Below are positions 7,594 to 21,755 of a DNA stretch of 64,000 nucleotides, piece by piece. The first letter of the stretch is position 1; every line of letters starts with the position of its first letter. The stretch lies in sequence record NC_022096.1; one strand, 5' to 3'. Both the position numbers and the translations under genes were made by a program. A model generated the notes under the pieces. It had not been told where the DNA came from. It saw only the letters and a list, made by a program, of their open reading frames with translations, and did no database searches.

Positions 7594-7833
7594 ATGAACG
7601 AAATCAAAATGAGCACCGGCCGTAGCGTGTTGAACCCGCTGGCCCTAGCTCAACCCGCAGCAGAACAGGCAGTTGCTGGCAACGACAAGCAAGTTGCGAT
7701 TGCCGCAGTCGATAACTCCACTGACGGCGTGTGCCCCAAGTGCCGCGCCACGATGGCAACCGCCTTCATCCCGCTGGGTCAGGTGTACTACTGCTCCACT
7801 TGCCGCGTGACCACGCCCATCCCTGAGGAGTAA
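7594..7833 (+). CDS. Small zinc-ribbon protein
   Basis: CPKC...CSTC; AAGGA SD. Confidence 0.6.
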   Translation: MNEIKMSTGRSVLNPLALAQPAAEQAVAGNDKQVAIAAVDNSTDGVCPKCRATMATAFIPLGQVYYCSTCRVTTPIPEE

Positions 7834-7838
7834 TTGCC

Positions 7839-10157
7839 ATGGTGGCGGAAGTATTGGTATTGTCCGACGTCGGCCTTCAGGCGATCAACAACGCATCCGC
7901 AGGTGGTCAGCTTGTGGATGCGGAGTCCTTTCGTATCGGCGACAGCGCGGGCAGCCCGAACAAAACGGATGCGACCGACATCCTCGGGAACATGCTGTTT
8001 GAAGGCAACATTCACCATGTCGAGGTGTTGAACAAGAACACTGCCCGTTTCGTGTTTGAAGTTCCTGGGTATCAAGTGACTCAGGACACCGAAATCAAAG
8101 AGATGGCAGTGTTCCTGAGCTCCTTCATCTGCTTGGGTCGTGTCGTTCTGAAAGCGCCAATCACCCTGCTGGCTGGAGAGACTACGCGCTTCAACTGCTT
8201 GCTGGTAACGAATCGCTGCGACCTGACCACGATCAACGTCACCTTTGGCGACTACTCGTCCATCCCGATGACGCCGTTCGTGTATCAGCTCCAGTCGCCC
8301 GGCCTGTCAAACTTCAACGCTGTCACCGTCCTCGATGGTCAGATCAACGATGACGGTTCGACTTCGCCTGTGCTCGCCATGCGTTATGGTGGCGGCAGCT
8401 TCCAGTGGGCGTTCAGTAACCACACGCGCATCTTCTTCGGGAAGCCCACTGCTGCAACCAGCACCAGCGTGACCATCGATGGTCTCGATCTGGATGAGAA
8501 CGAAGTGGTCATCGGCCACATCGTCAACGGCAACGGCCTGGGTCAAACTCGTCGCTGGCGTGTGCAGAACGGTCGTCTTGTCGAGGCAGACAATCGTCCG
8601 ATCAACGGCCTGGATTCCAACTCGACTATCGCTGTTTGGCAGCGTAGCGCTGGTGGCGGACAAGGCGGCGGCGCTTGCAGCTACCCGCCTTCGATGAATG
8701 GCGTGCCTGCTGACTGGGTTCTCGTTCGCGGTCATGGTGCTTGCCCGCAGTGGGCTCCGCCTCGCTCTGGTGCTGGTAACACAGCCACGTTGTACTCGCC
8801 GCCAAGTCGTCTGACGATGAACACGGTGAGCTATACTGGCGACGGCACCACCGCACGCTACCCGCTGGGTGCTCTTGAGCTGGAGAACGTCAACTACGTC
8901 CATCCAGTGCTCGGCGGTGTGAGTCAGCACCGTAGCTCGTTCGACATGGCGGCCAACGAAATCGAGTTCGTGGAAAAGATCCCGATGGGTCTGCCTATCG
9001 AACTGCGCACGTACAACCGCATCCCGTCGAATGGTTCGCGCCTGATCATCAAGACGGACTTCTTCGTCGGCGATGGTGTGACGCAGCGGTTCAAGATCAG
9101 CCAGCCGATTGAGAACGCCAACTACGTCAAGCCGTATCTGCGTGGTATTTTCCAGTTCATCACCACGTACACCTACGATGCTGCAACGCAAGAAGTGGTG
9201 TTCATCGGTCCTGTGCCTGCTGGCGTGGACGTGGAGCTGCGTTCATTCCGCTCCGAAGACTTCGAGGGGTCGAGTACCCAGATCAGCACCTACACGTACA
9301 CCACGCGTGAGGACACACTGTTCCTGGAGTTGCCTATCTCTCCGCAGTCGGTTGAGTACGTCGAAATCAGCCAGAGTGGTGCGCACATTCACGCGAACCA
9401 GTACAGCCTGGTGGACAACAAGATCATCTTTGCAGGCACCATTCGCAAAGACCTGGCGCTTGAAGTCACGGTGTACGACAACAAGATCAGCCAGGGCAGC
9501 GCCAACACCAACCTCAAAGGCGTGGTCGTCGATGCTGTGCTCTCCGGCCGTAGCTTGAAGTTGCTGCGCCACGGTGACAAGCCCATCAGCTTGCCGATTC
9601 CAGCAATCTCGCTGGAAGCTGGTCCAGGTATGCGTATCAGCGGACAACATCCGTTCTATCGGATCGAGTCCACAATCGCAAACCAGATGACAGACGCCAA
9701 CGCCAACTTCAAGCACTCCGACATCCGGACGCAGAAGGACTCTTCGGAGATTCAGTTCACTCATCGGGTGAATCTGAGCACCGACGTCATGGTATCTGTC
9801 CACGCCGACTTCTCTGCGCAGCTCGGCCCTGGCTTCGTGTCCGTCGAGGGCTTGGAGATTATGGAGTACGTGGTTGGTTTCCGTACTTCCAAGTCGCGTG
9901 AACCTGAGTACGGCCGGCAGATTGCAGGCACGGGTACTGCTGGTTTCAGCTCCTTGGCGGGAGACAAGAACGAGCGCGCCTACTCCAACGCTTCGTTGAC
10001 CCAGGTGTATGACGTGATCGTTGCCAACCACGCTGCCGGTTACATCGACATCGTGGTGAAGATGCGAGTGAAGAACGCAAACGTGAGCCAGTATGGCTCG
10101 CTGCTGTCGTTGACCGTAAACATTGTCGGTACTCCGAAAATCGCAGCCAGCGAGTAA
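7839..10157 (+). CDS. Tail fibre-base/baseplate-associated structural protein
   Basis: N-terminal LSDVGLQAI...FRIGD collar-type region; repeated GDG.T.RF.I units; operon context. Confidence 0.6.
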   Translation: MVAEVLVLSDVGLQAINNASAGGQLVDAESFRIGDSAGSPNKTDATDILGNMLFEGNIHHVEVLNKNTARFVFEVPGYQVTQDTEIKEMAVFLSSFICLGRVVLKAPITLLAGETTRFNCLLVTNRCDLTTINVTFGDYSSIPMTPFVYQLQSPGLSNFNAVTVLDGQINDDGSTSPVLAMRYGGGSFQWAFSNHTRIFFGKPTAATSTSVTIDGLDLDENEVVIGHIVNGNGLGQTRRWRVQNGRLVEADNRPINGLDSNSTIAVWQRSAGGGQGGGACSYPPSMNGVPADWVLVRGHGACPQWAPPRSGAGNTATLYSPPSRLTMNTVSYTGDGTTARYPLGALELENVNYVHPVLGGVSQHRSSFDMAANEIEFVEKIPMGLPIELRTYNRIPSNGSRLIIKTDFFVGDGVTQRFKISQPIENANYVKPYLRGIFQFITTYTYDAATQEVVFIGPVPAGVDVELRSFRSEDFEGSSTQISTYTYTTREDTLFLELPISPQSVEYVEISQSGAHIHANQYSLVDNKIIFAGTIRKDLALEVTVYDNKISQGSANTNLKGVVVDAVLSGRSLKLLRHGDKPISLPIPAISLEAGPGMRISGQHPFYRIESTIANQMTDANANFKHSDIRTQKDSSEIQFTHRVNLSTDVMVSVHADFSAQLGPGFVSVEGLEIMEYVVGFRTSKSREPEYGRQIAGTGTAGFSSLAGDKNERAYSNASLTQVYDVIVANHAAGYIDIVVKMRVKNANVSQYGSLLSLTVNIVGTPKIAASE

Positions 10158-10160
10158 GTC

Positions 10161-10652
10161 ATGAACACTACGAACATGGAAAAACTCATCTGCTATGTCA
10201 ATCTTGACGGCAGTTACGGACGTGCAACTCGGTTACCCGAAGGAGCTCAGGAAGTAGGAGAAGAAGTCCTGCAGCTCCTTGAGGAGAACCCTGACCTGAT
10301 CGAAGTTCGCGTTGAGGGTGGTCTTATCCACGTCATCCCTTCGCTTATTTCCTACAAAGCGGAAGCCTGCGCTACTGTGCGTCGGGCGATCAACAAGCAA
10401 GTCCCTGGGGACGAACGCTTGAATCGCCTGATGCGTTCTACCGTGCTCGGCATTGGCTGTTTCGATGTCGAGTCCGGTTTGCTCCTTGATGAAAAGGAGA
10501 CGCGAGGCAATTTCCAAACCCTTGTGCAGTTGGACAACGACTTGCGCTACTTGGAGGCGAAATACGTCTCCAAGATCAACCAAGCGCCTGACGTGACCAC
10601 TGTGGATCATCACCTGGACGTATTCCAGAGAACTCTGCAAGGTACTGTATGA
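10161..10652 (+). CDS. Hypothetical protein (possible fibre assembly chaperone)
   Basis: 163 aa ORF coupled (ATGA overlap) to the collagen gene. Confidence 0.45.
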   Translation: MNTTNMEKLICYVNLDGSYGRATRLPEGAQEVGEEVLQLLEENPDLIEVRVEGGLIHVIPSLISYKAEACATVRRAINKQVPGDERLNRLMRSTVLGIGCFDVESGLLLDEKETRGNFQTLVQLDNDLRYLEAKYVSKINQAPDVTTVDHHLDVFQRTLQGTV

Positions 10653-12028
10653 GCGTAAACGGTGTGTCCGACTCTCCTCTTTTGGAGAAAGCAGTCAACG
10701 GAGATCAGACAAGAGTGCCGATAGGCGCACCGGTGATTACAAACAACAAGAGCCAGATGTCGAAAAGCATCCAGCTCCTGACACCCGGTGCTGATCTCGT
10801 TACGCCTGAACTCACCCAGTTCGAGGCGTTCGGCGTGGAAGGCAAGGAGGCCTTCCGCAATGATAAAACCAAGGGCGTCGAGTTTCGTGACCGTACGTCC
10901 CCGAATGACAAGCTGATCGCGGAGTGGGCCTACGATCCTGTAGAGGGTTGTCTGGTACTGGTTCGCGTCAACAAGAAAGAAGAACGCATCTACGGGTTCC
11001 TGCGCCAAGAGTCGCTCGGTGTTGGTCCCACTGGTCCTCGCGGTAACCCTGGCAAAGACGGCCAAGACGGACGCGATGGGCGTGACGGTGCTGACGGTGA
11101 TCCTGGCTGCCCTGGCGATCCAGGTCCTCCCGGCGATGAGGGTTATCCTGGTGCTGAAGGTAATCCAGGCCTCATCGGTATTCAAGGTCCAGAGGGCTGT
11201 GAAGGTGCATCCGGCGATCGGGGTCTTGTAGGACCACAAGGTCGCCCAGGCTTCGAGGGTTCTCGTGGTCTGACGGGCCCCTCTTGCGCAGATGATCGGT
11301 TCGGCAACAAGGGCCCGCAAGGTATTGCGTTTGGCAAGGGTGTCTTGTTCGGCGCTGCGCAGCTTTCAAACCCGGAAGCTGCCATTGTTGGCTTGGACGA
11401 TGACGGCATCGACGCTGTTGCTCCTCCTGGCGGTTGGGACGGTTCTTCGACTCCACCTCCAACTTCGCAGCCGACAAACCCACCGCCACCGCCGACTGCC
11501 TCTGCTGGCATTTCTCTGTGTACGAATCACGGTAACGTCAAGAATAGTTGTGGCAATACCGTTAACGCGTGGTACTCGACATGGGCAAACTACGCGGCGC
11601 CCGGCGGTGCCAAGGGCCTGTCCACTCTGCCTATCGCTCGGCAGAACACGGCGTTCTGGCCGAACAGCATCGTCATGTGCGGCACGCTGCGTAAGAATGC
11701 GAGCTACACCTTTGAGCTGTCCACGCCAAACGGTGTCGCATCTTCTCTGTTCCTGAACTGCGCTATCGTCCTGCAGACAGATTACGTCGGCGGTACTTCC
11801 CGCAAGACCATGACCCTGACAGCAGATTCGTCGATTCGTCTGCGCTTCCTGAACAACGCCCCACGAATCCCGACGTGGTGCTCGTTGAAGATTTATGACG
11901 GTGCTACTGGTGCGTTGCTCTACAAGACAGGACAGAATGCACAGAATGCGGGCCTTTCTGGCGCAAACGCTTCCTACGTTATCGATCCTAACTGGAGAGG
12001 TAACGCTGCTGTTCAACAATACAACTAA
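10649..12028 (+). CDS. Collagen-like fibre protein 1 with C-terminal PA14-like domain
   Basis: About 29 uninterrupted GXY triplets; Pro-rich linker; SYTFEL...LFLNCAIV beta domain. Confidence 0.8.
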   Translation: MSVNGVSDSPLLEKAVNGDQTRVPIGAPVITNNKSQMSKSIQLLTPGADLVTPELTQFEAFGVEGKEAFRNDKTKGVEFRDRTSPNDKLIAEWAYDPVEGCLVLVRVNKKEERIYGFLRQESLGVGPTGPRGNPGKDGQDGRDGRDGADGDPGCPGDPGPPGDEGYPGAEGNPGLIGIQGPEGCEGASGDRGLVGPQGRPGFEGSRGLTGPSCADDRFGNKGPQGIAFGKGVLFGAAQLSNPEAAIVGLDDDGIDAVAPPGGWDGSSTPPPTSQPTNPPPPPTASAGISLCTNHGNVKNSCGNTVNAWYSTWANYAAPGGAKGLSTLPIARQNTAFWPNSIVMCGTLRKNASYTFELSTPNGVASSLFLNCAIVLQTDYVGGTSRKTMTLTADSSIRLRFLNNAPRIPTWCSLKIYDGATGALLYKTGQNAQNAGLSGANASYVIDPNWRGNAAVQQYN

Positions 12029-12037
12029 GGTCGTCCC

Positions 12038-12727
12038 ATGATTGGTTTGACTCGTATTCCCACGGGCATGATCTTCGCCCCAGGCGAGGCCTCACAGACT
12101 GAGGTAGTAGTCGAAGACGATCACCTAAAAGCGGCGGAGCCTGTTGAGTCTGACATCAGTGAAATCGAGAGCGGGTTCTACGACTGGCAACTCGGCATCC
12201 TGACACTCGCCATGTACAACGGAACCGTCATCAAGATCAGCGGTTTCGCCACTGCCGGTAACATCCCTGCGGGCCCTACAGGTCCGCAAGGTCTGCCTGG
12301 TAAAGATGGTAAAGATGGACGTGATGGCAAAGACGGTGCCAAGGGTCCAGAGGGTTGCCAAGGCCCACAGGGTCCACAGGGTGCTCAAGGTGCTACAGGT
12401 CCTGATGGTCGTGATGGGCAGATGGGCCAACAAGGTCCCCGCGGCTGTCCTGGCCCAAAAGGCCCTCCTGGCGAACGTGGACCAACTGGTCCTATGGGTC
12501 CATTGGGTCCGACCGGTCCTAGAGGAGAACAAGGTGCGCAAGGTGCTCCCGGCGCTCCTGGTCCTGCGGGCACAGTGAACATCATCGTCTCTACTACTGA
12601 TCCTGGTGCAGTTGGCGCCGGTTGGCTGTGGGTTAATCCAGGTGCGACAGGTGCCCCGAGCGGTGGTTCTGGTGGCGGCGGTTCTACTACGCCTACTGAC
12701 CCTCCGATTGGGACGCCATGGCCTTAA
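12038..12727 (+). CDS. Collagen-like fibre protein 2
   Basis: About 33 GXY triplets; N-term MIGLTRIP; C-terminal STTDP...GWLWVNP motif. Confidence 0.8.
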   Translation: MIGLTRIPTGMIFAPGEASQTEVVVEDDHLKAAEPVESDISEIESGFYDWQLGILTLAMYNGTVIKISGFATAGNIPAGPTGPQGLPGKDGKDGRDGKDGAKGPEGCQGPQGPQGAQGATGPDGRDGQMGQQGPRGCPGPKGPPGERGPTGPMGPLGPTGPRGEQGAQGAPGAPGPAGTVNIIVSTTDPGAVGAGWLWVNPGATGAPSGGSGGGGSTTPTDPPIGTPWP

Positions 12728-12741
12728 GGTAAGGTGAACAC

Positions 12742-13263
12742 ATGACAGGCTTGACAAGAGTTCCTCTGAAAATGATCGGTGCCTCAGGGCAGCCCGGCGA
12801 TGACGTTCGTTTCGACGGACGCGATGTCGCTGTGGTGCCCAGCACCGAGGACACGAACGACTACGGGCTCACCAGCGGTACGTATGACTCCATCGCTGGA
12901 CGCCTGACCCTGGTGCTGCGCAACGGCGCCCGCCTCGAACTCGACGGGTTCATCACCACTGGCGATATCGGCGTAGGCCCCGCTGGTCCGACAGGCCCCG
13001 CAGGCCGCGATGGTCGCGATGGCTTGAACGGCGTAGACGGCGAGAAGGGCGCCACTGGTTGCCAAGGCCCGGCCGGTCCTCCTGGTCGTCAAGGTCCTCG
13101 CGGTGAGCAAGGCATCCCAGGCCCCACGGGCCCCACAGGCGCTACCGGCCCAACAGGCCCGGCCGGGGAAGACGGCGTTCCGCAAATCTGGATTCAAACA
13201 GAAGACCCGGTCATCAAATCCGCAGATCACATAGTCCCCGGTGCATTGTGGGTGAAGCCGTAA
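12742..13263 (+). CDS. Collagen-like fibre protein 3
   Basis: About 22 GXY triplets; N-term MTGLTRVP; C-terminal QTEDP...GALWVKP. Confidence 0.8.
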
Positions 13264-13275
13264 TGGAGTGACAAC

Positions 13276-16200
13276 ATGAGTCGTCTACGCATTCGAGACG
13301 CTAAGAATGTCAAATGGATTGACATTTGCCAGAGCGAATGGCGTGTGCGGAACCCAGCCAACACGGGCTGGATTCGTATTACTCCGGCGCAGGGCATTAA
13401 AGCTCGACACGGTAGCGAGTATTACTGGCTCGACATTGACTGTCTTGCAGAAGAAGGGACCGAAGATTGCGGCCAAGACGAATACGGCGGCACACCTGAC
13501 GGTAAGGGTGAGAACGGCACCGGTCCGGGCAAACCCAGCACTGGAGGCGGAGACGGCTCCGGTGGAGGTGGCGATGGCGGCGGTGGAGACGGAGGCGGTA
13601 ACGGCGGAGACAATGGCTCTAACAACGGCGGCTCTGGCGATGGCGGCGGTATCGATAACGGTCCGGATAGTCCGAGCTTCAACGATGGCGACTCCGGCTC
13701 CGGTAACGGCGGTAGCGGCTGGCAAGAAGATGCTCCGTACCCACCTGGCTTCGACCTGCCTGACTCTGATGGGGACGGTGCCGGCGACAAGGGCGATTGC
13801 ATCTACCGCCCGGGTTTGAACACCTGTGAGACCAAGCAACCTATCGTTGTGCGTCCTGACATGGACTGCGGTACGAAGCGTCCCGGATCGTGGGACTGCC
13901 CGTTCGAGTGCCCGGATTCTGTTTCTGGCTCTGGCGCTGGTATTTCCGAGTTCTACATCAACATGGGCACCGCCTCGGGTAACATCAAGTTCCCGTGGAT
14001 TGCCTCCGCTGGCGCTAGCTTCGATATTTACTATCGCGGCAAGCGGGTCGCAACAACCAGCGGCCAGCGTAAAGGCACTGGCGCCTTGACCTTCGTGTTC
14101 AACCCGGTGAACAACGACCCGATGCTGTTTGTCCGCGTGCGCTCCACGTACAAGACCAACACTTGGACGTTGCAGATCAAGTGCGTTGGCGATGACGACG
14201 ATGACGGCACCATCAACAACCCGCGTCCGTGCCACGGCACCTTCGAAGTCAAGAAAGAAGGCGGGCAAGGCACCTACGAGTTCTACCATAACCTTGGGCC
14301 GACTGCTGGTCTGACGGACATCCACTATCAAATGTGGAATCAGCCAGACAAGATGGAAGTGTTCAACCATGCGGGCGTGTTGATTGCATCGACTGGTGGT
14401 TACGTTGCAGGCGAAGCTCACCTGAAATTTCAGCACACGCCTGGCGGGTCGAACATGGTGCGCGTGCGCATTACTGCGCGTGACCCAGGTACGTCTTGGA
14501 TTTACCTGATCACCTGCCCAGGTGAAGACGGTAGCGAAGATAACCCGCGTGAGTGTTCCGACACCTCAGCAGTTAAGTCTGGCGGTGCAGGCGTCACAGA
14601 TACCTTCATCGACATGGGTTCGACTGCTGGTAAAGTTGGCATCCGCTACCAGATGTGGCAGATTCCGGACAAACTGGACGTCTATCAAGAGGGTACGCTC
14701 GTTGCGACAACCGGAGGTCCTGTTACGGGAGACCACTGGCTGTACTTCGACTACGATCCGAGTCGCGGTCAGAAGATTCAGGTGCGCGTCACTGGCTCGG
14801 GCGCCACGTCGTGGTCGTTCCTGCATACGTGCCCCGGGGATGAAGACCCGAATATCAGTGTCAACTCGCCAAGCGTGCGTGAGGGTGCTGCAGGTGAGTC
14901 TCCGCAACTGTGCTGGACCATCACAATGGACAAGCCTCAGTCGCAACCAGTGACAGTGGACTACGCAACTGGCGGCGGCAACGCAAACCCGGTCGCTGCA
15001 CAAGGTCGCATCTTGGCTTCCGACCAGTTCAACAATCCGTTCATCGCCGTTGTTGATCAAGCAAACTTCGGCAAAGTTGCGTTCGATGGGGGCTTCCCCA
15101 AGTTCTACAACTCGACCTACGTTGCACCGCAGCCGCCTCCGACGGGCGCACAGGTGTTCAACACATGGTGGCGTACTGCCGGTGCTGAGTTCTACACCAG
15201 CCCGAGCGGAATTCCTAGTGGTAGTGAAGCAAACGCATGGGCGTACAGTGCTGGGTCGGGCAACATCTCGTCCACAGTGAACTCCGCGAACATCATTTCC
15301 TTCATTTCGCCCACGGCATACGATAGCTATACCTTCGAGGCTACGCTGTCTTCTTCTGCTGCGGACGACGACATGATCGGCTTGGTTGCCGCATACGCTC
15401 GCGTCGGTAGTGACAACTACCAGATCATCGCTTCTCGCCAACGCGGCGGGTTGAACGCCTTCGGTAGCAACTGGTCGCTGGCTCTGGTGAAAAACAACTC
15501 TGTCGTGAAAGTGCTGGCGTCGAACGCTGTTGGCGGGACGGGAAACTGGAACGGAACACGCACCCGCGTTCGTGTGCAGCGCGATTGTAACCAGATCAAC
15601 GTCTGGTGCTCGGCTTACGGTAGCGAGACAATCTCGGAAAGCACCTTGCTGCAGGCTGACCTGACCAGTGAAGATTTGGCAGTGTTCGGCGGTGCTGCTA
15701 CTCGCTGGGGCTTCACTGCCCAGTCGCAAGAGAACGCCACGTTCAGCAGCATCTTCGTGTCTGGTATTGGCTTGCCGCCTGCGTTTACCTACCTGAAGAA
15801 CATCGCCCTGTGGTCGCGTAAACCCGGCAACAGCAAAGCGTTGATTTTGTGCGACTCGGCTACGGTTAACCAGTACAACCTGGGCACTGCCGGAATGGCC
15901 TTCGGTGTTGGTATGCCGGAGACCCTGCGTTCTGTAGGCTTCGATGTCACTATGAGGTACCTGCCGGATATGGGGAACAAGATCACTGCCGCGGACTTGG
16001 CAGACTACGGCTTCTTGGTCGTGCTGTCTACAGATCACACCGGGGTCAACCACGCGACCGGCACCAGTGCAGCCGTCGTGGCGAACTGGGTGAAGAATGG
16101 CGGCGGTTTGTTTATCGTCACTGACCACGACGTGTTTCAAGCTACTGCGAATGCTTTGGCTGCTCCGTACAACATCGAGTTCTACGCTTCCGTCGATCGG

Positions 16201-16929
16201 AGCCCGGTGAGTGTTGGTCAGATCATCGCGTCGCATGGTGATCACCCGGCTTGGGAAGGGTTGAGTTGTAAGTCGATCCCAGCTGGCGGTAGTGAAGGTG
16301 CCATTCGCATCAAGCAAGTGCGCAGTGATTACAGCCCGATTTCAGGTACTGTTACCTTCGCGCCTGGTGAAACGTCCAAGGAAGTGTGTGCGCCGATCAT
16401 CGGCAACGACACGCAGGATGGTGACCGTACCATCAACATGAACATCAGCAATGCGTCCAAGGGAAACATCACAGTGCCCACAGGTACTGGGACGATCATC
16501 GACGACGATAGTGCGCTGTGCCGGCAAAATCCGCAGGGCGTAGTGTATGAAAGAGCTGGTGGTGGAGATGGTGCTTACCTGATGCACGTTCAGCCTGATT
16601 ACAACTGTGCGGCAGGCAACACGAAGTACCTGATGATGGCGAACTTGACGTTCCCGTACACGGGCCCGTACGTTATCACCATGACGTCCGACGATGACTT
16701 CGAGCTGTACATCGACTGTAAGAAGGTTGCGTCTGGTCCGATCGGTACTCGGCAGTACACCGTGAACATCAACGCAGGTACACGCAACGTCATCCTTCGA
16801 TACTTGAACGTGCCAAACTGTACGCCTGGTTACGCTGGCTTTACCGCCCGCTACAACAACCTGATGGTGTACTCGACGCGCGCTGCTGATTGGAAGGGTC
16901 AAGCCAATAGCATTGGAGAAATCGAGTAA
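13276..16929 (+). CDS. Multidomain virion adhesin: Gly-rich linker, three beta repeats, split Calx-beta, lectin (TSP_C-like) and GATase-like inserts, PA14-like C-terminus
   Basis: SVREG...VTVDYAT / SGTVTFAPGETSKEV...IIDDD (Calx-beta halves); DDDMIGLV; SDDDFELYID (PA14-like). Confidence 0.7.
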   Translation: MSRLRIRDAKNVKWIDICQSEWRVRNPANTGWIRITPAQGIKARHGSEYYWLDIDCLAEEGTEDCGQDEYGGTPDGKGENGTGPGKPSTGGGDGSGGGGDGGGGDGGGNGGDNGSNNGGSGDGGGIDNGPDSPSFNDGDSGSGNGGSGWQEDAPYPPGFDLPDSDGDGAGDKGDCIYRPGLNTCETKQPIVVRPDMDCGTKRPGSWDCPFECPDSVSGSGAGISEFYINMGTASGNIKFPWIASAGASFDIYYRGKRVATTSGQRKGTGALTFVFNPVNNDPMLFVRVRSTYKTNTWTLQIKCVGDDDDDGTINNPRPCHGTFEVKKEGGQGTYEFYHNLGPTAGLTDIHYQMWNQPDKMEVFNHAGVLIASTGGYVAGEAHLKFQHTPGGSNMVRVRITARDPGTSWIYLITCPGEDGSEDNPRECSDTSAVKSGGAGVTDTFIDMGSTAGKVGIRYQMWQIPDKLDVYQEGTLVATTGGPVTGDHWLYFDYDPSRGQKIQVRVTGSGATSWSFLHTCPGDEDPNISVNSPSVREGAAGESPQLCWTITMDKPQSQPVTVDYATGGGNANPVAAQGRILASDQFNNPFIAVVDQANFGKVAFDGGFPKFYNSTYVAPQPPPTGAQVFNTWWRTAGAEFYTSPSGIPSGSEANAWAYSAGSGNISSTVNSANIISFISPTAYDSYTFEATLSSSAADDDMIGLVAAYARVGSDNYQIIASRQRGGLNAFGSNWSLALVKNNSVVKVLASNAVGGTGNWNGTRTRVRVQRDCNQINVWCSAYGSETISESTLLQADLTSEDLAVFGGAATRWGFTAQSQENATFSSIFVSGIGLPPAFTYLKNIALWSRKPGNSKALILCDSATVNQYNLGTAGMAFGVGMPETLRSVGFDVTMRYLPDMGNKITAADLADYGFLVVLSTDHTGVNHATGTSAAVVANWVKNGGGLFIVTDHDVFQATANALAAPYNIEFYASVDRSPVSVGQIIASHGDHPAWEGLSCKSIPAGGSEGAIRIKQVRSDYSPISGTVTFAPGETSKEVCAPIIGNDTQDGDRTINMNISNASKGNITVPTGTGTIIDDDSALCRQNPQGVVYERAGGGDGAYLMHVQPDYNCAAGNTKYLMMANLTFPYTGPYVITMTSDDDFELYIDCKKVASGPIGTRQYTVNINAGTRNVILRYLNVPNCTPGYAGFTARYNNLMVYSTRAADWKGQANSIGEIE

Positions 16930-17099
16930 TGGCTGTCAGACTGCGAGTTCGTCAATCGACTAGCAGTCCGTGGATCGAGAACTTCGATAAGCTCGGGTGG
17001 AAGCTAAGGAATAGCTCCAATTCTGGATGGATTCAGATGCACCCGGGCAACACGAAAGTCCGCTCTTCGGACAACACACGCTGGCTCAATGTGAAGTGA
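16929..17099 (+). CDS. 56 aa Trp-repeat protein, paralog of the N-terminus of 13276-16929; absent from ORF track
   Basis: TAATG overlap; [56 protein letters not shown]; fills the gap exactly. Confidence 0.8.
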
Positions 17100-17106
17100 G
17101 GAAACT

Positions 17107-17913
17107 ATGAGTGGATTGACAAGAATCCCGCTCCCGATGATCGATCCTGGCGCTGGCGTCGCTAACGACGAGGTGAAATTCAACGGAGAGCGCCTCGAAT
17201 TGCAAAACCCGGACGACGATACCGATGTCCAGGTCACGGAAGGTGTGTACGACCCAGAGACAGGCACGTTGACTCTGCGCAAAGCAGACAACTCTGTGCT
17301 CAACATTCGCGGCTTCTTGACCAAGGCGAGTGTCGGTGTAGGCCCCACTGGCCCAACAGGTCCTCAGGGTAAGCCTGGTATCAACGGGCGCAACGGCAAA
17401 GATGGTCGCGTAGGTGATCAAGGCTGCGTGGGGCCCAAAGGTGATCCAGGCCCAGCAGGCCCGACGGGCCCAGCAGGTCCGGGTGGCGGTATCGGTGCTC
17501 AGGGCGCTACTGGCCCAACTGGTCCAACTGGTCCGACAGGCCCTGCTGGACTTGACGGTAAGGCACCAACGTTCGGCGTAGGCGAAGTGGATGCTTACGA
17601 GTTCTACGAGAATCACAGCCTTAAATGTTGGGGCCGATTCACGTCGGAAGATGCGGCAGTTTTCCAGCGCGTCGTATTCCCGGAAGCCTTCGAGCGAGAC
17701 AAGCCACGGGTCATGCTTCTGCAATTCATCGACCCGAAGAGCAACGTCAAGAACGCCGTGCGCATCGACCGTATCAACAAAGGCAACGCCGAGTTGAGTG
17801 TGGATGCTTCCATGTTGGAGCAAGAATCCGATGGTGAAGGCGGCACGCGACCTGTAGCTGCTACCGGTTGGGACTTCTACTGGTTCGTCATCGGCAGCGA
17901 CGCCGACGCATAA
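17107..17913 (+). CDS. Collagen-like fibre protein 4 with tail-fibre-type C-terminal domain
   Basis: About 24 GXY triplets (one GGG interruption); MSGLTRIP; KCWGRF...VVFPEAF...FYWFVIG. Confidence 0.8.
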
Positions 17914-17923
17914 GGAGAAAGCT

Positions 17924-18376
17924 ATGGCTTTACCAGCGGCATACTACCAACTTGTCTATGATGAGAAGACAGGTGACGTGCTGTCGTTCTGGAACCCAAT
18001 GAGGGGCGAGTGTCCTGACTCGCCTTACATTGAAGTTTCCCTGGAGGACCACGCTCGCGTACAGCCTGCACCGTTCAAGTTCCGCGTCATCGATAAGCGC
18101 CTGGTTGAAGTGAGCGATATACCAAAAGATGAACGTCCGAAGCGTCCAGCTGTCTCCGAAGCGATCATCGCGGGTCTTGTAATCGACGGCGTGTGCTACG
18201 CGCTCGACCCGAAAGCTCTGGCTGTGTTGACGCTCGATCTGTCCAGAGGCTCCAAGACCTGCAGGGCAATCGCCCACACTCCGACAGGAAACCAACTGGT
18301 AACCCTGCCAAAGGAAGATGCCAAGAACGTAGCCTCGATGATAGCCGACCACTTGGTGGCTCTACATTGTGGATAA
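17924..18376 (+). CDS. Putative tail fibre assembly chaperone
   Basis: LVYDEKTGDVLSFW...YIEVSLEDH...FRVIDKRLV; position after a fibre gene; AAGGAG SD. Confidence 0.5.
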   Translation: MALPAAYYQLVYDEKTGDVLSFWNPMRGECPDSPYIEVSLEDHARVQPAPFKFRVIDKRLVEVSDIPKDERPKRPAVSEAIIAGLVIDGVCYALDPKALAVLTLDLSRGSKTCRAIAHTPTGNQLVTLPKEDAKNVASMIADHLVALHCG

Positions 18377-18407
18377 TTTACTCGCAGTGTACATCGAGGT
18401 GTGAACC

Positions 18408-19229
18408 ATGTCTCTTCCTACTAGCAGGCTTATCCAGGCCGCCGTGGATCGCGGCCTGACTGTGGCCACGCCCGTTCTTCTCACCATGGACGGGCCGGAA
18501 CACATTCGCGTAAACGTCATCATCAGCCACGCGGAGCCCGTCTCTGTCGTGGCTCCTTTGGACTTGCTGTGGATTAACCCTGACACAGGCACTCCGCTGC
18601 GCCGTGTCAGTCGTGCCCAGTCGCAAGACTTCGTGCATACCTGGGAAGTCGCGGACGAGACATCGTTCTGGTTGGCTCAATCCTGGGATGAACCACGACC
18701 GAACGACCAAGACTTTCAGGAGCTCAACCGAAACATCGGCAACACGCACGGGCTGATCCTGGCCGATATCGGCGCGCTCGGTGTTGAAGGTGGAGACCTG
18801 ACAGGACCATTGCGTCCACGAGTCTTGGAAGTCGGAGACGACTACGCACCTACGGAAGCGGTACCTCGCTCGTTCGTCGAAAAGCTGACCATGGCGGCGC
18901 AAAGCCTAGCAGCTTCGGTTAGCCAACAGCTCACCAGCCTGCGTAACCAAGTTACGTCTGTGCGAAACCGCGTGACGGTAGTCGAAGACGAGTTGGAAAA
19001 CATCCAGCTCGGTGACGGCACGCCACGATACAAACATGACCAAGTGGAACCCTCACTTGAGTGGATCATCGTTCACAACCTACACGTACCGGACGTCACA
19101 GTTCGTGCCGTGCGGGAAGATGGGACGCTGATGATTCCAGCCACGGAAACAATGATCGATGAAGATACGCTGCGCCTGACGTTTGCCGAAGCTCGCCAGG
19201 GACGCGCCGTGATTCTCGGCATAAGGTGA
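18408..19229 (+). CDS. Virion structural protein with coiled coil and C-terminal WxIxHNL domain
   Basis: Heptads at VSQQLTSLRNQVTSVRNRV; WIIVHNLHVPDVTVRAV. Confidence 0.55.
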   Translation: MSLPTSRLIQAAVDRGLTVATPVLLTMDGPEHIRVNVIISHAEPVSVVAPLDLLWINPDTGTPLRRVSRAQSQDFVHTWEVADETSFWLAQSWDEPRPNDQDFQELNRNIGNTHGLILADIGALGVEGGDLTGPLRPRVLEVGDDYAPTEAVPRSFVEKLTMAAQSLAASVSQQLTSLRNQVTSVRNRVTVVEDELENIQLGDGTPRYKHDQVEPSLEWIIVHNLHVPDVTVRAVREDGTLMIPATETMIDEDTLRLTFAEARQGRAVILGIR

Positions 19230-20947: not shown

Positions 20948-21739
20948 ATGGCCTATGTGCTCAACAACATACGGTTTCGATCTGTCAGTTCAAAGGCGCT
21001 GGAGAGGTACTACAACTCCAAGTCGTTCATCCTGAATGTCCTGATCGACGAACAAAGACAGTTCAGCCAAGTAGCCCGCGAAATCCTGCTGCTGTTTTTC
21101 AACAGCTATTCGGACTGGGCTATCAAGGTGGAGAGCCTGTTGTTGAACCGAAGCGTTTTGGAGGAGACGGACCTCAAGATCATCTTCCAGCGCTTCGGTG
21201 AAGTAGTCGAATCCAACAAGAGCATTTTCACCATTCACGGTGACGTGTTTTTGCCGCAGTTCGTAGACGTTTGGGGTGCTGTGCATAAGCACGTGCCTCT
21301 GAACTTCAAGCGCAAGGTTCGGCAAACGGTGGGCCTCTCTCAGCTTGAGGCCTATCCGCTTATCATCGATGCGTTGGTCGATGCCCTTCAATCCACGCTG
21401 TACGAGCTGTACGAAGTGGACTGCCTTCTAGGGTCTAACCTGGTGGGCAACAAGATCAGCACCAACGCGTCCATGCAGGACAACCTGATCACGTACATTG
21501 ACGATGGTGACCTGGAATATTACCGAGCCACTGGGGTCTTCATCGCCAAAGAGAGAATCACTCACTACTTGGACACGGTAATCCTGCCGGACATCGTTGT
21601 CCCTGTGGTCGTGAAAAACTACACGGAAGAAAAAATTGCGTTGAAAAACGGCTTGGTAGTTGGGGATCAGCCATTCGCACGGCTGCTAACCGACATGTTA
21701 GAAAACCCCCGCATTAAAATCGTTGAGATCGCATCCTGA
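20948..21739 (+). CDS. Hypothetical protein
   Basis: 263 aa ORF with TAGGA SD, contiguous in the operon. Confidence 0.55.
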   Translation: MAYVLNNIRFRSVSSKALERYYNSKSFILNVLIDEQRQFSQVAREILLLFFNSYSDWAIKVESLLLNRSVLEETDLKIIFQRFGEVVESNKSIFTIHGDVFLPQFVDVWGAVHKHVPLNFKRKVRQTVGLSQLEAYPLIIDALVDALQSTLYELYEVDCLLGSNLVGNKISTNASMQDNLITYIDDGDLEYYRATGVFIAKERITHYLDTVILPDIVVPVVVKNYTEEKIALKNGLVVGDQPFARLLTDMLENPRIKIVEIAS

Positions 21740-21755
21740 TCCTGGAGTAATCAAC

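What the first reader, a model, noticed from the sequence alone, without database searches (positions are those of the whole stretch)
10649..17913. Four collagen fibres with cysteines in an exact 10-triplet register
Seen: counting from the first GP(T/A) triplet, all four collagen proteins have G-C-X at triplet 10 (GCP, GCQ, GCQ, GCV). The two longest have another at triplet 20 (GCE, GCP), and the 459 aa protein ends its helix with a Cys at the start of triplet 30. The other triplets are divergent. All four share the preceding YD...G.L.L...N....I.GF domain, and three begin MxGLTR(I/V)P. Inference: periodic Cys every 30 residues (about 8.6 nm at 0.286 nm per residue) forms inter-chain disulfide or metal knots, or a ruler for staggered or heterotrimeric assembly into a cross-linked mesh. 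Cys is rare in prokaryotic collagen domains.
Basis: partly seen in the sequence, partly recalled or inferred. Interest (0 to 1): 0.7.

Follow-up and report, generated by a model that had tools for sequence, protein, structure and literature searches.

The report
Cysteine-stapled collagen fibres of phage PaBG
Four collagen-like tail-fibre proteins of the giant Pseudomonas phage PaBG carry cysteines at fixed places in their triple helices; related phages conserve these places, and two of the fibres gain or lose one of them together, which suggests the fibres are tied side by side, most likely by disulfide bridges.

Summary
The window is Pseudomonas phage PaBG, a jumbo myovirus. All four collagen ORFs have Cys at the X position of triplet 10. 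The 459-aa (A) and 229-aa (B) proteins also have Cys at triplet 20. A has a Cys directly after triplet 29, which is 29 residues later, not 30, and sits at a Gly position.

This is not chance. In 28 distinct collagen domains from related phages, triplet-10 X is Cys in 28 of 28 (TGT 15, TGC 13) and is the only invariant non-Gly position. Among 95 metagenomic family members found with a profile that excludes the Cys, 76 have it. In 121 unrelated viral collagen ORFs, Cys makes up 0.067% of X/Y positions and never occurs there.

New findings:
- Helix lengths are quantised across the group: A 29, B 34, C 23 and D 24-25 triplets.
- The triplet-20 Cys is present in both A and B or in neither, in 27 lineages with no exception and at least 3-4 independent changes.
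- The net charges of A and B over triplets 1-9 are anticorrelated (r = -0.71).

Best reading: homotrimeric fibres lie side by side in register and are stapled by inter-helix disulfides. The general 30-residue ruler, metal binding and a heterotrimer are not supported. No experiment has tested any of this.

The parts
10649..12028 (+). Collagen fibre A (RefSeq gp241, PaBG_00245), 459 aa. Order of parts: N-extension, shared N-domain, 29-triplet helix, break containing a Cys, short second G-X-Y stretch, Pro-rich linker, beta-sandwich head.
   Evidence: PHROG 8745 tail fibre, E = 1e-83.
10790..11023 (+). Shared N-domain of A (residues 48-125).
   Evidence: Alignments. The family was recovered with this domain alone.
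11024..11284 (+). Collagen helix of A, 29 triplets.
11108..11110 (+). A Cys154, X of triplet 10 (TGC).
11198..11200 (+). A Cys184, X of triplet 20 (TGT). Co-varies with B Cys137.
11285..11287 (+). A Cys213, first residue after triplet 29 (a Gly position). Present in every class-A ortholog seen.
11516..12025 (+). C-terminal head of A, predicted beta-sandwich. Bounds are approximate (residues ~290-459).
   Evidence: pLDDT 80-93 over this part; weak fold matches to carbohydrate-binding modules, TNF-like jelly rolls and distal domains of other phage fibres.
12038..12727 (+). Collagen fibre B (gp240, PaBG_00246), 229 aa: N-domain, 34-triplet helix, short C-terminal cap.
12272..12577 (+). Collagen helix of B, 34 triplets.
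12356..12358 (+). B Cys107, X of triplet 10 (TGC).
12446..12448 (+). B Cys137, X of triplet 20 (TGT). Co-varies with A Cys184.
12742..13263 (+). Collagen fibre C (gp239, PaBG_00247), 173 aa: N-domain, 23-triplet helix (12976-13182), 26-aa cap.
13060..13062 (+). C Cys107, X of triplet 10 (TGC). The only Cys in the protein.
17107..17913 (+). Collagen fibre D (gp236, PaBG_00250), 268 aa: N-domain, 25-triplet helix (17341-17565), 115-aa C-terminal domain.
17425..17427 (+). D Cys107, X of triplet 10 (TGC).
7839..10157 (+). 772-aa neighbour (gp243, 'tail-collar fibre protein'). Single-copy and syntenic in all relatives. Used as the anchor for loci and for the phylogeny.
10161..10652 (+). 163-aa ORF (gp242) between the anchor and A. 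Its stop overlaps the start of A. Present in the Pseudomonas-type lineages only.
13276..16929 (+). 1217-aa protein (gp238) between C and D, syntenic in relatives. It has a Gly/Asp/Ser-rich N-terminal stretch, three tandem ~105-aa domains and a weak Calx-beta hit.

Best explanation
A, B, C and D are four paralogous collagen-like fibres of the peripheral baseplate or tail-fibre module of phage PaBG. Each most likely forms a homotrimer. In each, a shared ~78-aa all-beta N-domain sits at the base. A charged block at triplets 4-7 helps the helix form without hydroxyproline. The helix has a fixed length: 29, 34, 23 or 25 triplets, about 25, 29, 20 and 21 nm.

Because the N-domains are homologous, the helices start at the same level. 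The outward-pointing Cys at X of triplet 10 (about 8 nm out) therefore lies at the same height in every fibre. I propose that neighbouring triple helices run side by side over their first 10-20 triplets, held by complementary charge. Once the virion leaves the reducing cytoplasm, they are stapled to each other by inter-helix disulfides at triplet 10. In PaBG-type lineages, A and B carry a second staple at triplet 20. The Cys that ends the helix of A is a separate feature: a helix-end (Gly-position) residue, likely to link the three A chains to each other.

Shown here:
- the positions of the cysteines;
- their conservation;
- the A-B co-variation;
- the charge anticorrelation;
- the fixed helix lengths;
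- the position of the genes among baseplate genes.

Inferred:
- homotrimers;
- side-by-side packing;
- disulfide chemistry;
- presence of these proteins in the virion.
For: Identity and context:
- The window is PaBG.
- The genes follow the PAAR spike, sheath initiator, baseplate wedge and a large tail protein.
- All four match the Pfam Collagen model and PHROG tail-fibre families.

Selection on Cys at triplet 10:
- 28 of 28 distinct domains have it, with TGT 15 and TGC 13. It is the only invariant non-Gly position.
- 76 of 95 representatives found without using the Cys have it. Of the 105 Cys in 5438 X/Y positions, 91 are at triplet 10 or 20.
- Control collagen ORFs have 0.067% Cys, and none at that position.

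Coupling between fibres:
- In 27 lineages the triplet-20 Cys is in both A and B (12 lineages) or in neither (15). It is never in one alone.
- On the anchor tree of 23 of these lineages the Fitch minimum is 4 changes. It is 4 in 194 and 3 in 6 of 200 bootstrap trees.
- An independent binary character reproduces the same tip pattern with P <= 5e-5.
- The A and B gene trees agree with the anchor tree.
- NCTB and its sister L029 differ at that one position in both genes, inside otherwise orthologous local sequence. These are therefore point changes in place, not a cassette swap.
- In L167 the B-like partner has lost one early triplet and carries Cys at 9 and 19, so the 10-triplet spacing is kept.
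- Net charge of triplets 1-9 is anticorrelated between A and B (r = -0.71) and between A and C (r = -0.55).

Homotrimers:
- Helix lengths are unequal but fixed. Among 173 distinct domains, 23 triplets occur 45 times, 24-25 occur 24 times, 29 occur 51 times and 34 occur 46 times.
- A prophage collagen tail fibre has been shown to be a homotrimer (PMC3368898).

Geometry:
- A 10-triplet spacing returns a thiol to the same face of the helix in both ideal collagen symmetries. In the 10/3 symmetry it is the same chain; in the 7/2 symmetry it is another chain.

Precedent:
- A myophage of a Gram-negative host has an extensive inter-subunit disulfide network in its tail and baseplate (PMC10811340).
- The C1q stem is a disulfide-linked bundle of triple helices (PMC11869133).
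Against: - No experiment shows a disulfide, or even that these proteins are in the virion. The 14 bands identified in the PaBG proteome do not include them (PMC7412058).
- The triplet-10 Cys can be lost from one fibre alone. A loses it in the Dickeya-type clade and in L076, C in L077, L079, L082 and L169, and B in L074. It therefore has no obligatory single partner.
- A homotrimer offers three thiols per level, and the model does not say what the other two do.
- In L080, B has the triplet-20 Cys but no class-A gene lies next to it on a 10.5-kb contig, so it cannot be scored.
- The charge correlation is not corrected for phylogeny.
- The trees are neighbour-joining trees of one protein.
- The geometric argument shows only compatibility. 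Spacings of 3, 4 and 7 triplets would also work.
- If the triplet-20 Cys is ancestral, its fixed place is inheritance, not convergence.
- The structure tool folds single chains only, so packing could not be modelled.
Confidence: 0.5

Rival explanations
1. A, B and C are chains of one heterotrimeric triple helix, as in C1q. The cysteines bridge chains within it or link heterotrimers to each other.
For: - Three adjacent paralogous genes in a conserved order share a homologous N-domain.
- A-B co-variation and A-B / A-C charge complementarity are also what chain pairing inside one helix would give.
- In NCTB-type lineages A is strongly basic and B strongly acidic over triplets 1-9, at +7 to +9 against -6 to -7. 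This would disfavour pure A trimers.
Against: - Helix lengths of 29, 34 and 23 triplets are unequal, yet each is strictly conserved with Gly at every third residue to its own end. Two-chain or one-chain stretches would not need that.
- The paralog number varies: an extra 33-triplet paralog in L082, L169 and L170, an extra 22-triplet one in L066, and two 34-triplet ones in L074.
- B and C share a C-terminal cap motif that would sit 11 triplets apart in a common helix.
- D has the same N-domain but is encoded apart from the others.
- X-position side chains of neighbouring chains are, by my own rough estimate from standard helix geometry, about 9 Angstrom apart at C-beta. That is too far for a disulfide inside one helix.
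Confidence: 0.15
2. The cysteines do not pair with each other. Each contacts a third component at a fixed height above the baseplate, such as another baseplate protein or a bridging metal ion.
For: - The height is the same in all four fibres.
- Single-fibre losses of the triplet-10 Cys are tolerated.
- The large neighbour gp238 has 23 Cys.
Against: - The 772-aa anchor has no invariant Cys.
- gp242 is absent from half of the lineages.
- A common partner for the triplet-20 Cys of A and B would still place A and B together.
- Outward-facing single thiols make a poor metal site.
- No candidate partner has been identified.
Confidence: 0.15
3. The cysteines form inter-chain disulfides within each homotrimer. 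They lock chain register and raise thermal stability, like collagen cystine knots.
For: - This is plausible for the helix-end Cys of class A. In the HRDY3/Lu11 clade it is joined by a second Cys four residues earlier.
- Vertebrate collagens have knots of this kind at helix ends (own knowledge).
Against: - For triplets 10 and 20 there is one Cys per chain, at an outward-facing X position in mid-helix. That gives an odd number of thiols and unfavourable geometry.
- It does not explain why A and B change together or why their charges are complementary.
Confidence: 0.1
4. The register is a relic of gene duplication with no present function.
For: The four genes are paralogs, and the first 11 triplets are their most similar collagen part.
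Against: - The Cys is invariant, with both codons in use, while neighbouring X/Y positions have entropies of 2-3 bits.
- It is retained across phages whose anchor proteins are only ~31-35% identical.
- Cys is otherwise almost absent from viral collagen.
- The triplet-20 Cys changes are coupled in two genes.
Confidence: 0.03

Closest known systems
Defence collagens: C1q (also collectins, ficolins, adiponectin)
   Same: - Several paralogous collagen chains are encoded side by side.
- The triple helices bundle in parallel over their N-proximal part and then carry separate heads.
- Cysteines near the N-terminal end tie chains and helices together. In C1q the pattern is (A-B)6(C-C)3 (PMC11869133).
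- The head of A is a beta-sandwich, with weak fold matches that include TNF-like jelly rolls.
   Different: - No gC1q or lectin domain is detected.
- The chains have unequal helix lengths, so homotrimers are likely rather than an ABC heterotrimer.
- The cysteines lie inside the G-X-Y helix at X positions, not in a non-collagen N-terminal segment.
- A folded N-domain precedes the helix.
Collagen IV 7S domain and collagen cystine knots (type III, FACIT collagens)
   Same: - Disulfides fix the register of collagen helices relative to each other (7S) or of chains at a helix end (knots) (own knowledge).
- The class-A helix-end Cys resembles a knot. The resemblance is closest for the two-Cys version in the HRDY3/Lu11 clade.
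   Different: - This is a phage protein with no sequence relation to them.
- In PaBG there is a single Cys per chain at the helix end.
- The mid-helix Cys at triplets 10 and 20 have no counterpart in those knots.
Prophage and phage collagen-like tail fibres (e.g. EPclA of E. coli O157 prophages; mycobacteriophage collagen-like minor tail proteins)
   Same: - Trimeric phage fibre proteins use a genuine collagen helix between an N-terminal attachment part and a C-terminal head (PMC3368898).
- The PaBG proteins hit the same PHROG tail-fibre groups through the collagen part.
   Different: - The flanking domains are different. No Pfam family matches the N-domain here.
- Those fibres have essentially no Cys in the helix: the control set has 0.067%.
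- No fixed helix length or multi-paralog set has been described for them.
Disulfide network of Agrobacterium phage Milano
   Same: It is a contractile-tailed phage of a Gram-negative host whose tail and baseplate subunits are covalently linked by conserved inter-subunit disulfides (PMC10811340).
   Different: In Milano the links are in the sheath, tube and wedge proteins and have been shown by cryo-EM and mass spectrometry. Here they would lie in collagen fibres and are only inferred.
Bacterial collagen-like proteins (Scl1/Scl2, BclA)
   Same: They have hydroxyproline-free triple helices with many charged triplets, and a folded domain next to the helix that drives trimerisation (own knowledge).
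   Different: They have no conserved Cys register, are not phage parts, and show no sequence relation outside G-X-Y.

Membership tests
Collagen triple-helix repeat proteins (Pfam PF01391) | Long uninterrupted G-X-Y repeat that scores above the family threshold. | tested here: met
   36.7-59.8 bits against a cutoff of 27.2 for all four; 23-34 uninterrupted triplets.
Collagen triple-helix repeat proteins (Pfam PF01391) | Three chains actually form a triple helix. | not testable with these tools
   Only single-chain prediction was available. It is inferred from strict Gly periodicity conserved across the family.
Phage tail fibre / baseplate fibre proteins | Profile match to tail-fibre families. 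| tested here: met
   PHROG 8745 (tail fiber), with E from 1e-83 (A) to 5e-28 (D), plus many other tail-fibre PHROGs.
Phage tail fibre / baseplate fibre proteins | Encoded in the tail/baseplate gene block. | tested here: met
   the genes lie downstream of the PAAR spike, sheath initiator, wedge subunit and large tail protein. The synteny is kept in more than 60 related loci.
Phage tail fibre / baseplate fibre proteins | Present in the virion. | tested here: inconclusive
   The PaBG proteome table lists 14 bands, none with the masses of these proteins. No proteome of a relative was found in the library.
C1q / TNF-like defence collagens | C-terminal gC1q (or lectin) head detectable by sequence. 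| tested here: not met
   no Pfam hit outside Collagen; no PDB relative by sequence; only weak fold matches (E about 1e-2) to TNF-family ligands, among many other beta-sandwiches.
C1q / TNF-like defence collagens | Heterotrimer of three paralogous chains with near-equal helix lengths. | tested here: not met
   Helix lengths of 29, 34 and 23 triplets are fixed across the group.
Collagen cystine knot (type III / FACIT type) | Two cysteines per chain at the C-terminal end of the helix. | tested here: not met
   PaBG A has one Cys (Cys213) at the helix end. The two-Cys form occurs in the HRDY3/Lu11 clade only.
Hint / intein-like self-processing domain | Hint-domain profile match starting at a Cys. 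| tested here: not met
   PaBG A has no Hint hit. Class-A orthologs of the enterobacterial clade and NCTB give only sub-threshold Hint_2 / PT-HINT hits, and these start about 160 residues after the helix-end Cys.

The most novel reading that the evidence does not exclude
The four fibres form a register-locked, covalently stapled multi-helix collagen stalk on the baseplate. In it, different homotrimeric triple helices are paired by complementary charge. They are bridged by disulfides placed inside the G-X-Y helix at outward-facing X positions, with a second A-B bridge exactly ten triplets further on. This would be a viral counterpart of the C1q stem or the collagen IV 7S domain, built in a different way. 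It would also be a natural template for cross-linking collagen helices side by side.
Probability: 0.35. Interest if true: 0.75.

Novelty: new variant of a known kind. Interest (0 to 1): 0.6.

Why it matters
Collagen-like phage fibres are common, but how triple helices pack against each other is poorly understood even for human collagens. This family offers an unusually clean natural case:
- four paralogs with fixed helix lengths;
- a single invariant outward-facing Cys;
- a second Cys that co-evolves in two different genes;
- complementary charge between those genes.

If the fibres are indeed stapled side by side, this shows how a virus builds a rigid, register-locked collagen bundle without hydroxyproline. 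It would also give a testable model for the peripheral baseplate of the 'hairy' jumbo myoviruses (Lu11, PaBG, Dickeya and Erwinia phages), whose fibres are structurally undescribed. Finally, it suggests simple design rules for cross-linked collagen materials. None of the papers found on this phage group mentions the collagen nature of these genes or the cysteines.

Tried and rejected
1. Intein idea. The residues after the helix-end Cys in class-A orthologs made me suspect the start of a Hint domain. Pfam places the weak Hint hits about 160 residues further on, and PaBG A has none. Rejected.
2. Heterotrimer. Considered seriously and kept as a rival, but disfavoured by the fixed unequal helix lengths and the variable paralog number.
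3. 'Thirty residues is one superhelix turn, hence the ruler.' Bookkeeping shows that 10 triplets is compatible with both ideal symmetries, but so are 3, 4 and 7. I kept it as compatibility only.
4. Cassette transfer or gene conversion as the cause of the A-B co-variation. Rejected: the gene trees agree with the anchor tree, and the local sequence is orthologous.
5. Partner Cys in neighbouring proteins. The anchor has no invariant Cys, and gp242 is not universal.
6. Sequence and fold searches for the N-domain and for the heads of A and D. These gave no PDB or Pfam relatives. The B model gives a confident small all-beta N-domain but no significant fold match. The N-domain is unrelated to the anchor.
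7. Link to the 'hairs' of hairy Myoviridae. The group is described as hairy (PMC6143709), but nothing ties the hairs to these genes.
8. Phage MIJ3 turned out to be unrelated.
9. Technical failures.
   - The search for related loci with the 50-sequence alignment failed.
   - A first bootstrap script timed out.
   - The scan with a class-B alignment returned mostly generic collagens. I used these as a control set.
10. Band 3 of the PaBG proteome table ('gp240', 83.5 kDa). It matches the mass of the 772-aa anchor, not of PaBG_00240, so the assignment is uncertain.

Full report
**What the window is.** Bases 10000-18500 are 100% identical to Pseudomonas phage PaBG (NC_022096 / KF147891), a 258-kb jumbo myovirus of P. 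aeruginosa PAO1. Window coordinate = record coordinate minus 186000. The four collagen ORFs are annotated only as 'tail fiber protein' (gp241, gp240, gp239, gp236; PaBG_00245, 246, 247, 250). They lie in the baseplate block, downstream of a PAAR spike, a sheath-polymerisation initiator, a wedge subunit, a 1216-aa tail protein and a 772-aa 'tail-collar fibre' protein. No promoter-like or terminator-like excess interrupts the block.

**The observation.** I call the proteins A (459 aa), B (229 aa), C (173 aa) and D (268 aa). One search confirms the register exactly.
- Cys is at the X position of triplet 10 in all four.
- Cys is at X of triplet 20 in A and B.
- A has Cys213 directly after its 29th triplet.
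- These are the only collagen runs in the window.
- B, C and D start with the same eight-residue motif, and all four share a ~78-aa N-domain. A has a 47-residue extension in front of it.

Two details differ from the finding.
- The third Cys of A is 29 residues after the second and sits at a Gly position. It lies in a six-residue break that is followed by three more G-X-Y triplets.
- Triplets 4-7 are not divergent. They form a conserved block with Lys/Arg at X and Asp at Y.

**Is it more than chance?** tblastn with B found the same N-domain in Pseudomonas phages HRDY3 and Lu11, phage NCTB, Yersinia phage fHe-Yen9-02, Erwinia phages (pEa_SNUABM_7 group, Yoloswag), and the records Afa-NA1 and Sen-NF. 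All have the same gene block.
- In 28 distinct collagen domains from these phages, X of triplet 10 is Cys in every one, with TGT 15 times and TGC 13 times. It is the only invariant non-Gly position. Neighbouring X/Y positions have entropies of 2-3 bits, and only 4 Cys occur in the other 1640 X/Y positions.
- An exhaustive profile search with the N-domain alone (so the Cys was not in the query) gave 182 hits. Of the 95 top representatives that have the domain and at least 12 triplets, 76 have Cys at triplet-10 X and 15 at triplet-20 X. Of 105 Cys in 5438 X/Y positions, 91 are at these two places.
- As a control I used 121 distinct unrelated viral collagen ORFs. They have 13 Cys in 19,488 X/Y positions (0.067%), and none at triplet-10 X.

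**Fixed helix lengths.** Using the 772-aa neighbour as a single-copy anchor, I fetched 47 viral and 17 metagenomic loci, and further loci through individual proteins. The four-fibre set is present throughout. Each class has its own helix length: A 29 triplets followed by Cys, B 34, C 23, and D 24-25 (44-49 in the HRDY3/Lu11 clade). Among 173 distinct domains, 23 triplets occur 45 times, 24-25 occur 24 times, 29 occur 51 times and 34 occur 46 times. Only 7 have other lengths. This holds although the anchor proteins are only ~31-35% identical between clades. Fixed, unequal lengths with Gly periodicity kept to each end argue that each protein forms its own homotrimer, and that both ends of each helix are held in a defined architecture.

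**Co-variation.** The triplet-20 Cys is not family-wide. In 27 lineages it is present in both A and B (12 lineages) or in neither (15), never in one alone.
- On a neighbour-joining tree of the anchor for 23 of these lineages, the pattern needs at least 4 changes. It needs 4 in 194 and 3 in 6 of 200 bootstrap trees. NCTB and L029 are sisters in 200 of 200.
- A simulated independent binary character reproduces the same tip pattern with a probability of at most 5e-5.
- Trees of A and of B agree with the anchor tree.
- Between the sisters NCTB (without) and L029, both genes differ at that one X position inside otherwise orthologous local sequence. These are point changes in place, not a transferred cassette or gene conversion.
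- In L167 the B-like partner has lost one early triplet and carries Cys at 9 and 19, so the 10-triplet spacing is kept.
- One locus (L080) has B with the triplet-20 Cys and no class-A gene next to it on a short contig. It cannot be scored.

By contrast, the triplet-10 Cys can be lost from a single fibre.
- A loses it in the Dickeya-type clade and in L076.
- C loses it in L077, L079, L082 and L169.
- B loses it in L074.

**Charge.** Net charge over triplets 1-9 is anticorrelated between A and B across 23 genomes (r = -0.71; permutation p < 5e-5). Examples are +9/-7, +7/-6 and -5/+4. It is also anticorrelated between A and C (r = -0.55). Over triplets 11-19, A is always acidic and C neutral to basic. 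These tests are not corrected for phylogeny.

**Structure.** The single-chain AlphaFold model of B gives a confident small all-beta N-domain (pLDDT about 90 over residues 11-90), with no significant PDB fold match. The C-terminal ~170 residues of A fold as a beta-sandwich (pLDDT 80-93). It has weak matches to carbohydrate-binding modules, TNF-like jelly rolls and the distal domains of other phage fibres, so it is a plausible receptor-binding head. No Pfam or PDB sequence relatives exist for the N-domain or the heads. B and C share a short C-terminal cap motif.

**Interpretation.** X-position side chains point away from the helix axis. By my own rough estimate from standard helix geometry, neighbouring chains' X residues are too far apart for a disulfide inside one helix, and three thiols per level is an odd number. 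The A-B co-variation and the charge complementarity therefore point to contacts between helices. The model I favour (confidence 0.5) has four parts.
- Homotrimeric fibres start level, because their N-domains are homologous.
- They run side by side over the first 10-20 triplets.
- After release from the reducing cytoplasm they are stapled by inter-helix disulfides at triplet 10.
- In PaBG-type lineages there is a second A-B staple at triplet 20.

A 10-triplet spacing brings a thiol back to the same face in both ideal collagen symmetries, though other spacings would too. The helix-end Cys of A is a separate feature that probably links the A chains to each other. In the HRDY3/Lu11 clade it is doubled into a two-Cys motif. 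Precedents are the disulfide network of phage Milano (PMC10811340), the homotrimeric prophage collagen fibre EPclA (PMC3368898) and the disulfide-linked C1q stem bundle (PMC11869133).

Rivals:
- an ABC heterotrimer (0.15);
- a third partner or metal ion (0.15);
- intra-trimer stabilisation (0.1);
- a functionless relic (0.03).

**What is not shown.** No disulfide, no oligomeric state and no virion location has been demonstrated. The PaBG proteome paper lists 14 bands without these proteins and does not mention collagen (PMC7412058). The group is described as 'hairy Myoviridae' (PMC6143709), but nothing connects the hairs with these genes.

**Novelty.** None of the papers found on this phage group mentions the collagen nature of the genes or the cysteines. 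Collagen-like phage fibres and disulfide-linked collagen bundles are both known kinds. A family with mid-helix, outward-facing, register-fixed and co-evolving cysteines, together with quantised helix lengths, is a new variant.

None is written in this report, and nothing was deleted.

Noticed in passing
window 11024-11284, 12272-12577, 12976-13182, 17341-17565; loci L002-L084, L167-L170: Collagen helix lengths are quantised and class-specific across the whole phage group: 29, 34, 23 and 24-25 triplets. D has 44-49 in the HRDY3/Lu11 clade. This holds although the neighbouring anchor protein is only ~31-35% identical between clades. It suggests that both ends of each helix are fixed in a larger structure.
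   Followed up: yes
window 11033-11044 region in A and the equivalent in B, C and D (triplets 4-7): There is a conserved block of triplets with Lys/Arg at X and Asp at Y just after the N-domain. Asp is at Y in 23 of 28 domains at triplet 7. It is probably a helix-nucleating or stabilising charged segment.
   Followed up: partly
L002:2566-3483, L004:2796-3479, L020-L027, L169, L170: In the HRDY3/Lu11 clade, class A lacks the triplet-20 Cys. Instead it has a Cys at Y of triplet 28, four residues before the invariant helix-end Cys. This gives a two-Cys motif at the helix end that resembles collagen cystine knots.
   Followed up: partly
L003:4017-5534, L006:4568-6001, L008:3551-4978: Class-A orthologs of NCTB and the enterobacterial clade give sub-threshold Hint_2 / PT-HINT hits in their C-terminal third. 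NCTB annotators call neighbouring genes 'intein domain proteins'. PaBG A has no such hit, so the distal part of A has been exchanged between lineages.
   Followed up: partly
window 13276-16929 (gp238): The 1217-aa protein has a Gly/Asp/Ser-rich low-complexity stretch (41 Gly in residues 61-160). It also has three tandem ~105-aa domains, each starting and ending at a Cys (pairwise local-alignment z-scores 11-38), a weak Calx-beta hit, and 23 Cys in all.
   Followed up: partly
L004, L019, L077, L079, L083, L084 (class A), L082 (second B-like paralog): A Gly-to-Ala interruption recurs between triplets 5 and 8 in several lineages. It is almost always in class A and never in class C. It may be a hinge.
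   Followed up: no
P0012, P0016, P0034, P0050 and about 45 other hits: The central part of the N-domain (profile positions ~35-72) matches 3-12 tandem repeats in large proteins of 400-3600 aa that have no collagen. One such protein (P0032) hits the KTSC, DUF2283 and 'collagen-flanked surface repeat' models. The N-domain is therefore built from a widespread small beta-meander unit.
   Followed up: partly
L008 (Alcaligenes phage Afa-NA1, 78 kb) and L009 (Salmonella phage Sen-NF, 108 kb): These two records have different stated hosts and sub-jumbo lengths. Yet they carry fibre genes with identical collagen runs, and the same block as the 250-kb Erwinia and Yersinia jumbo phages. The records may be partial or mis-assigned.
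   Followed up: no
window 7839-10157: The calculated mass of the 772-aa ORF (83,569 Da) matches the 83,518-Da virion band that the PaBG paper assigns to 'gp240, base plate wedge subunit'. PaBG_00240 is only 488 aa, so the numbering in that table seems shifted.
   Followed up: partly
window 7594-7833, 18408-19229, 20949-21740: Some RefSeq product names look doubtful for their size or evidence. A 79-aa ORF is called 'DNA ligase' ('MutM-like' in GenBank). gp234 is called 'HNH endonuclease' with no Pfam HNH hit. gp230 is called 'ABC transporter' and sits in a structural block.
   Followed up: no
window 12578-12724 and 13183-13260: B and C share a short C-terminal cap motif directly after the helix (10 of 26 residues identical). 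It is conserved in their orthologs and may be a small trimerisation cap.
   Followed up: partly
L077, L079, L082, L169: Class C has lost its triplet-10 Cys in four lineages. In L077, A has an extra Cys at triplet 9. In L082 and L169, an extra 33-triplet paralog with the triplet-10 Cys is present. This may be compensation.
   Followed up: no
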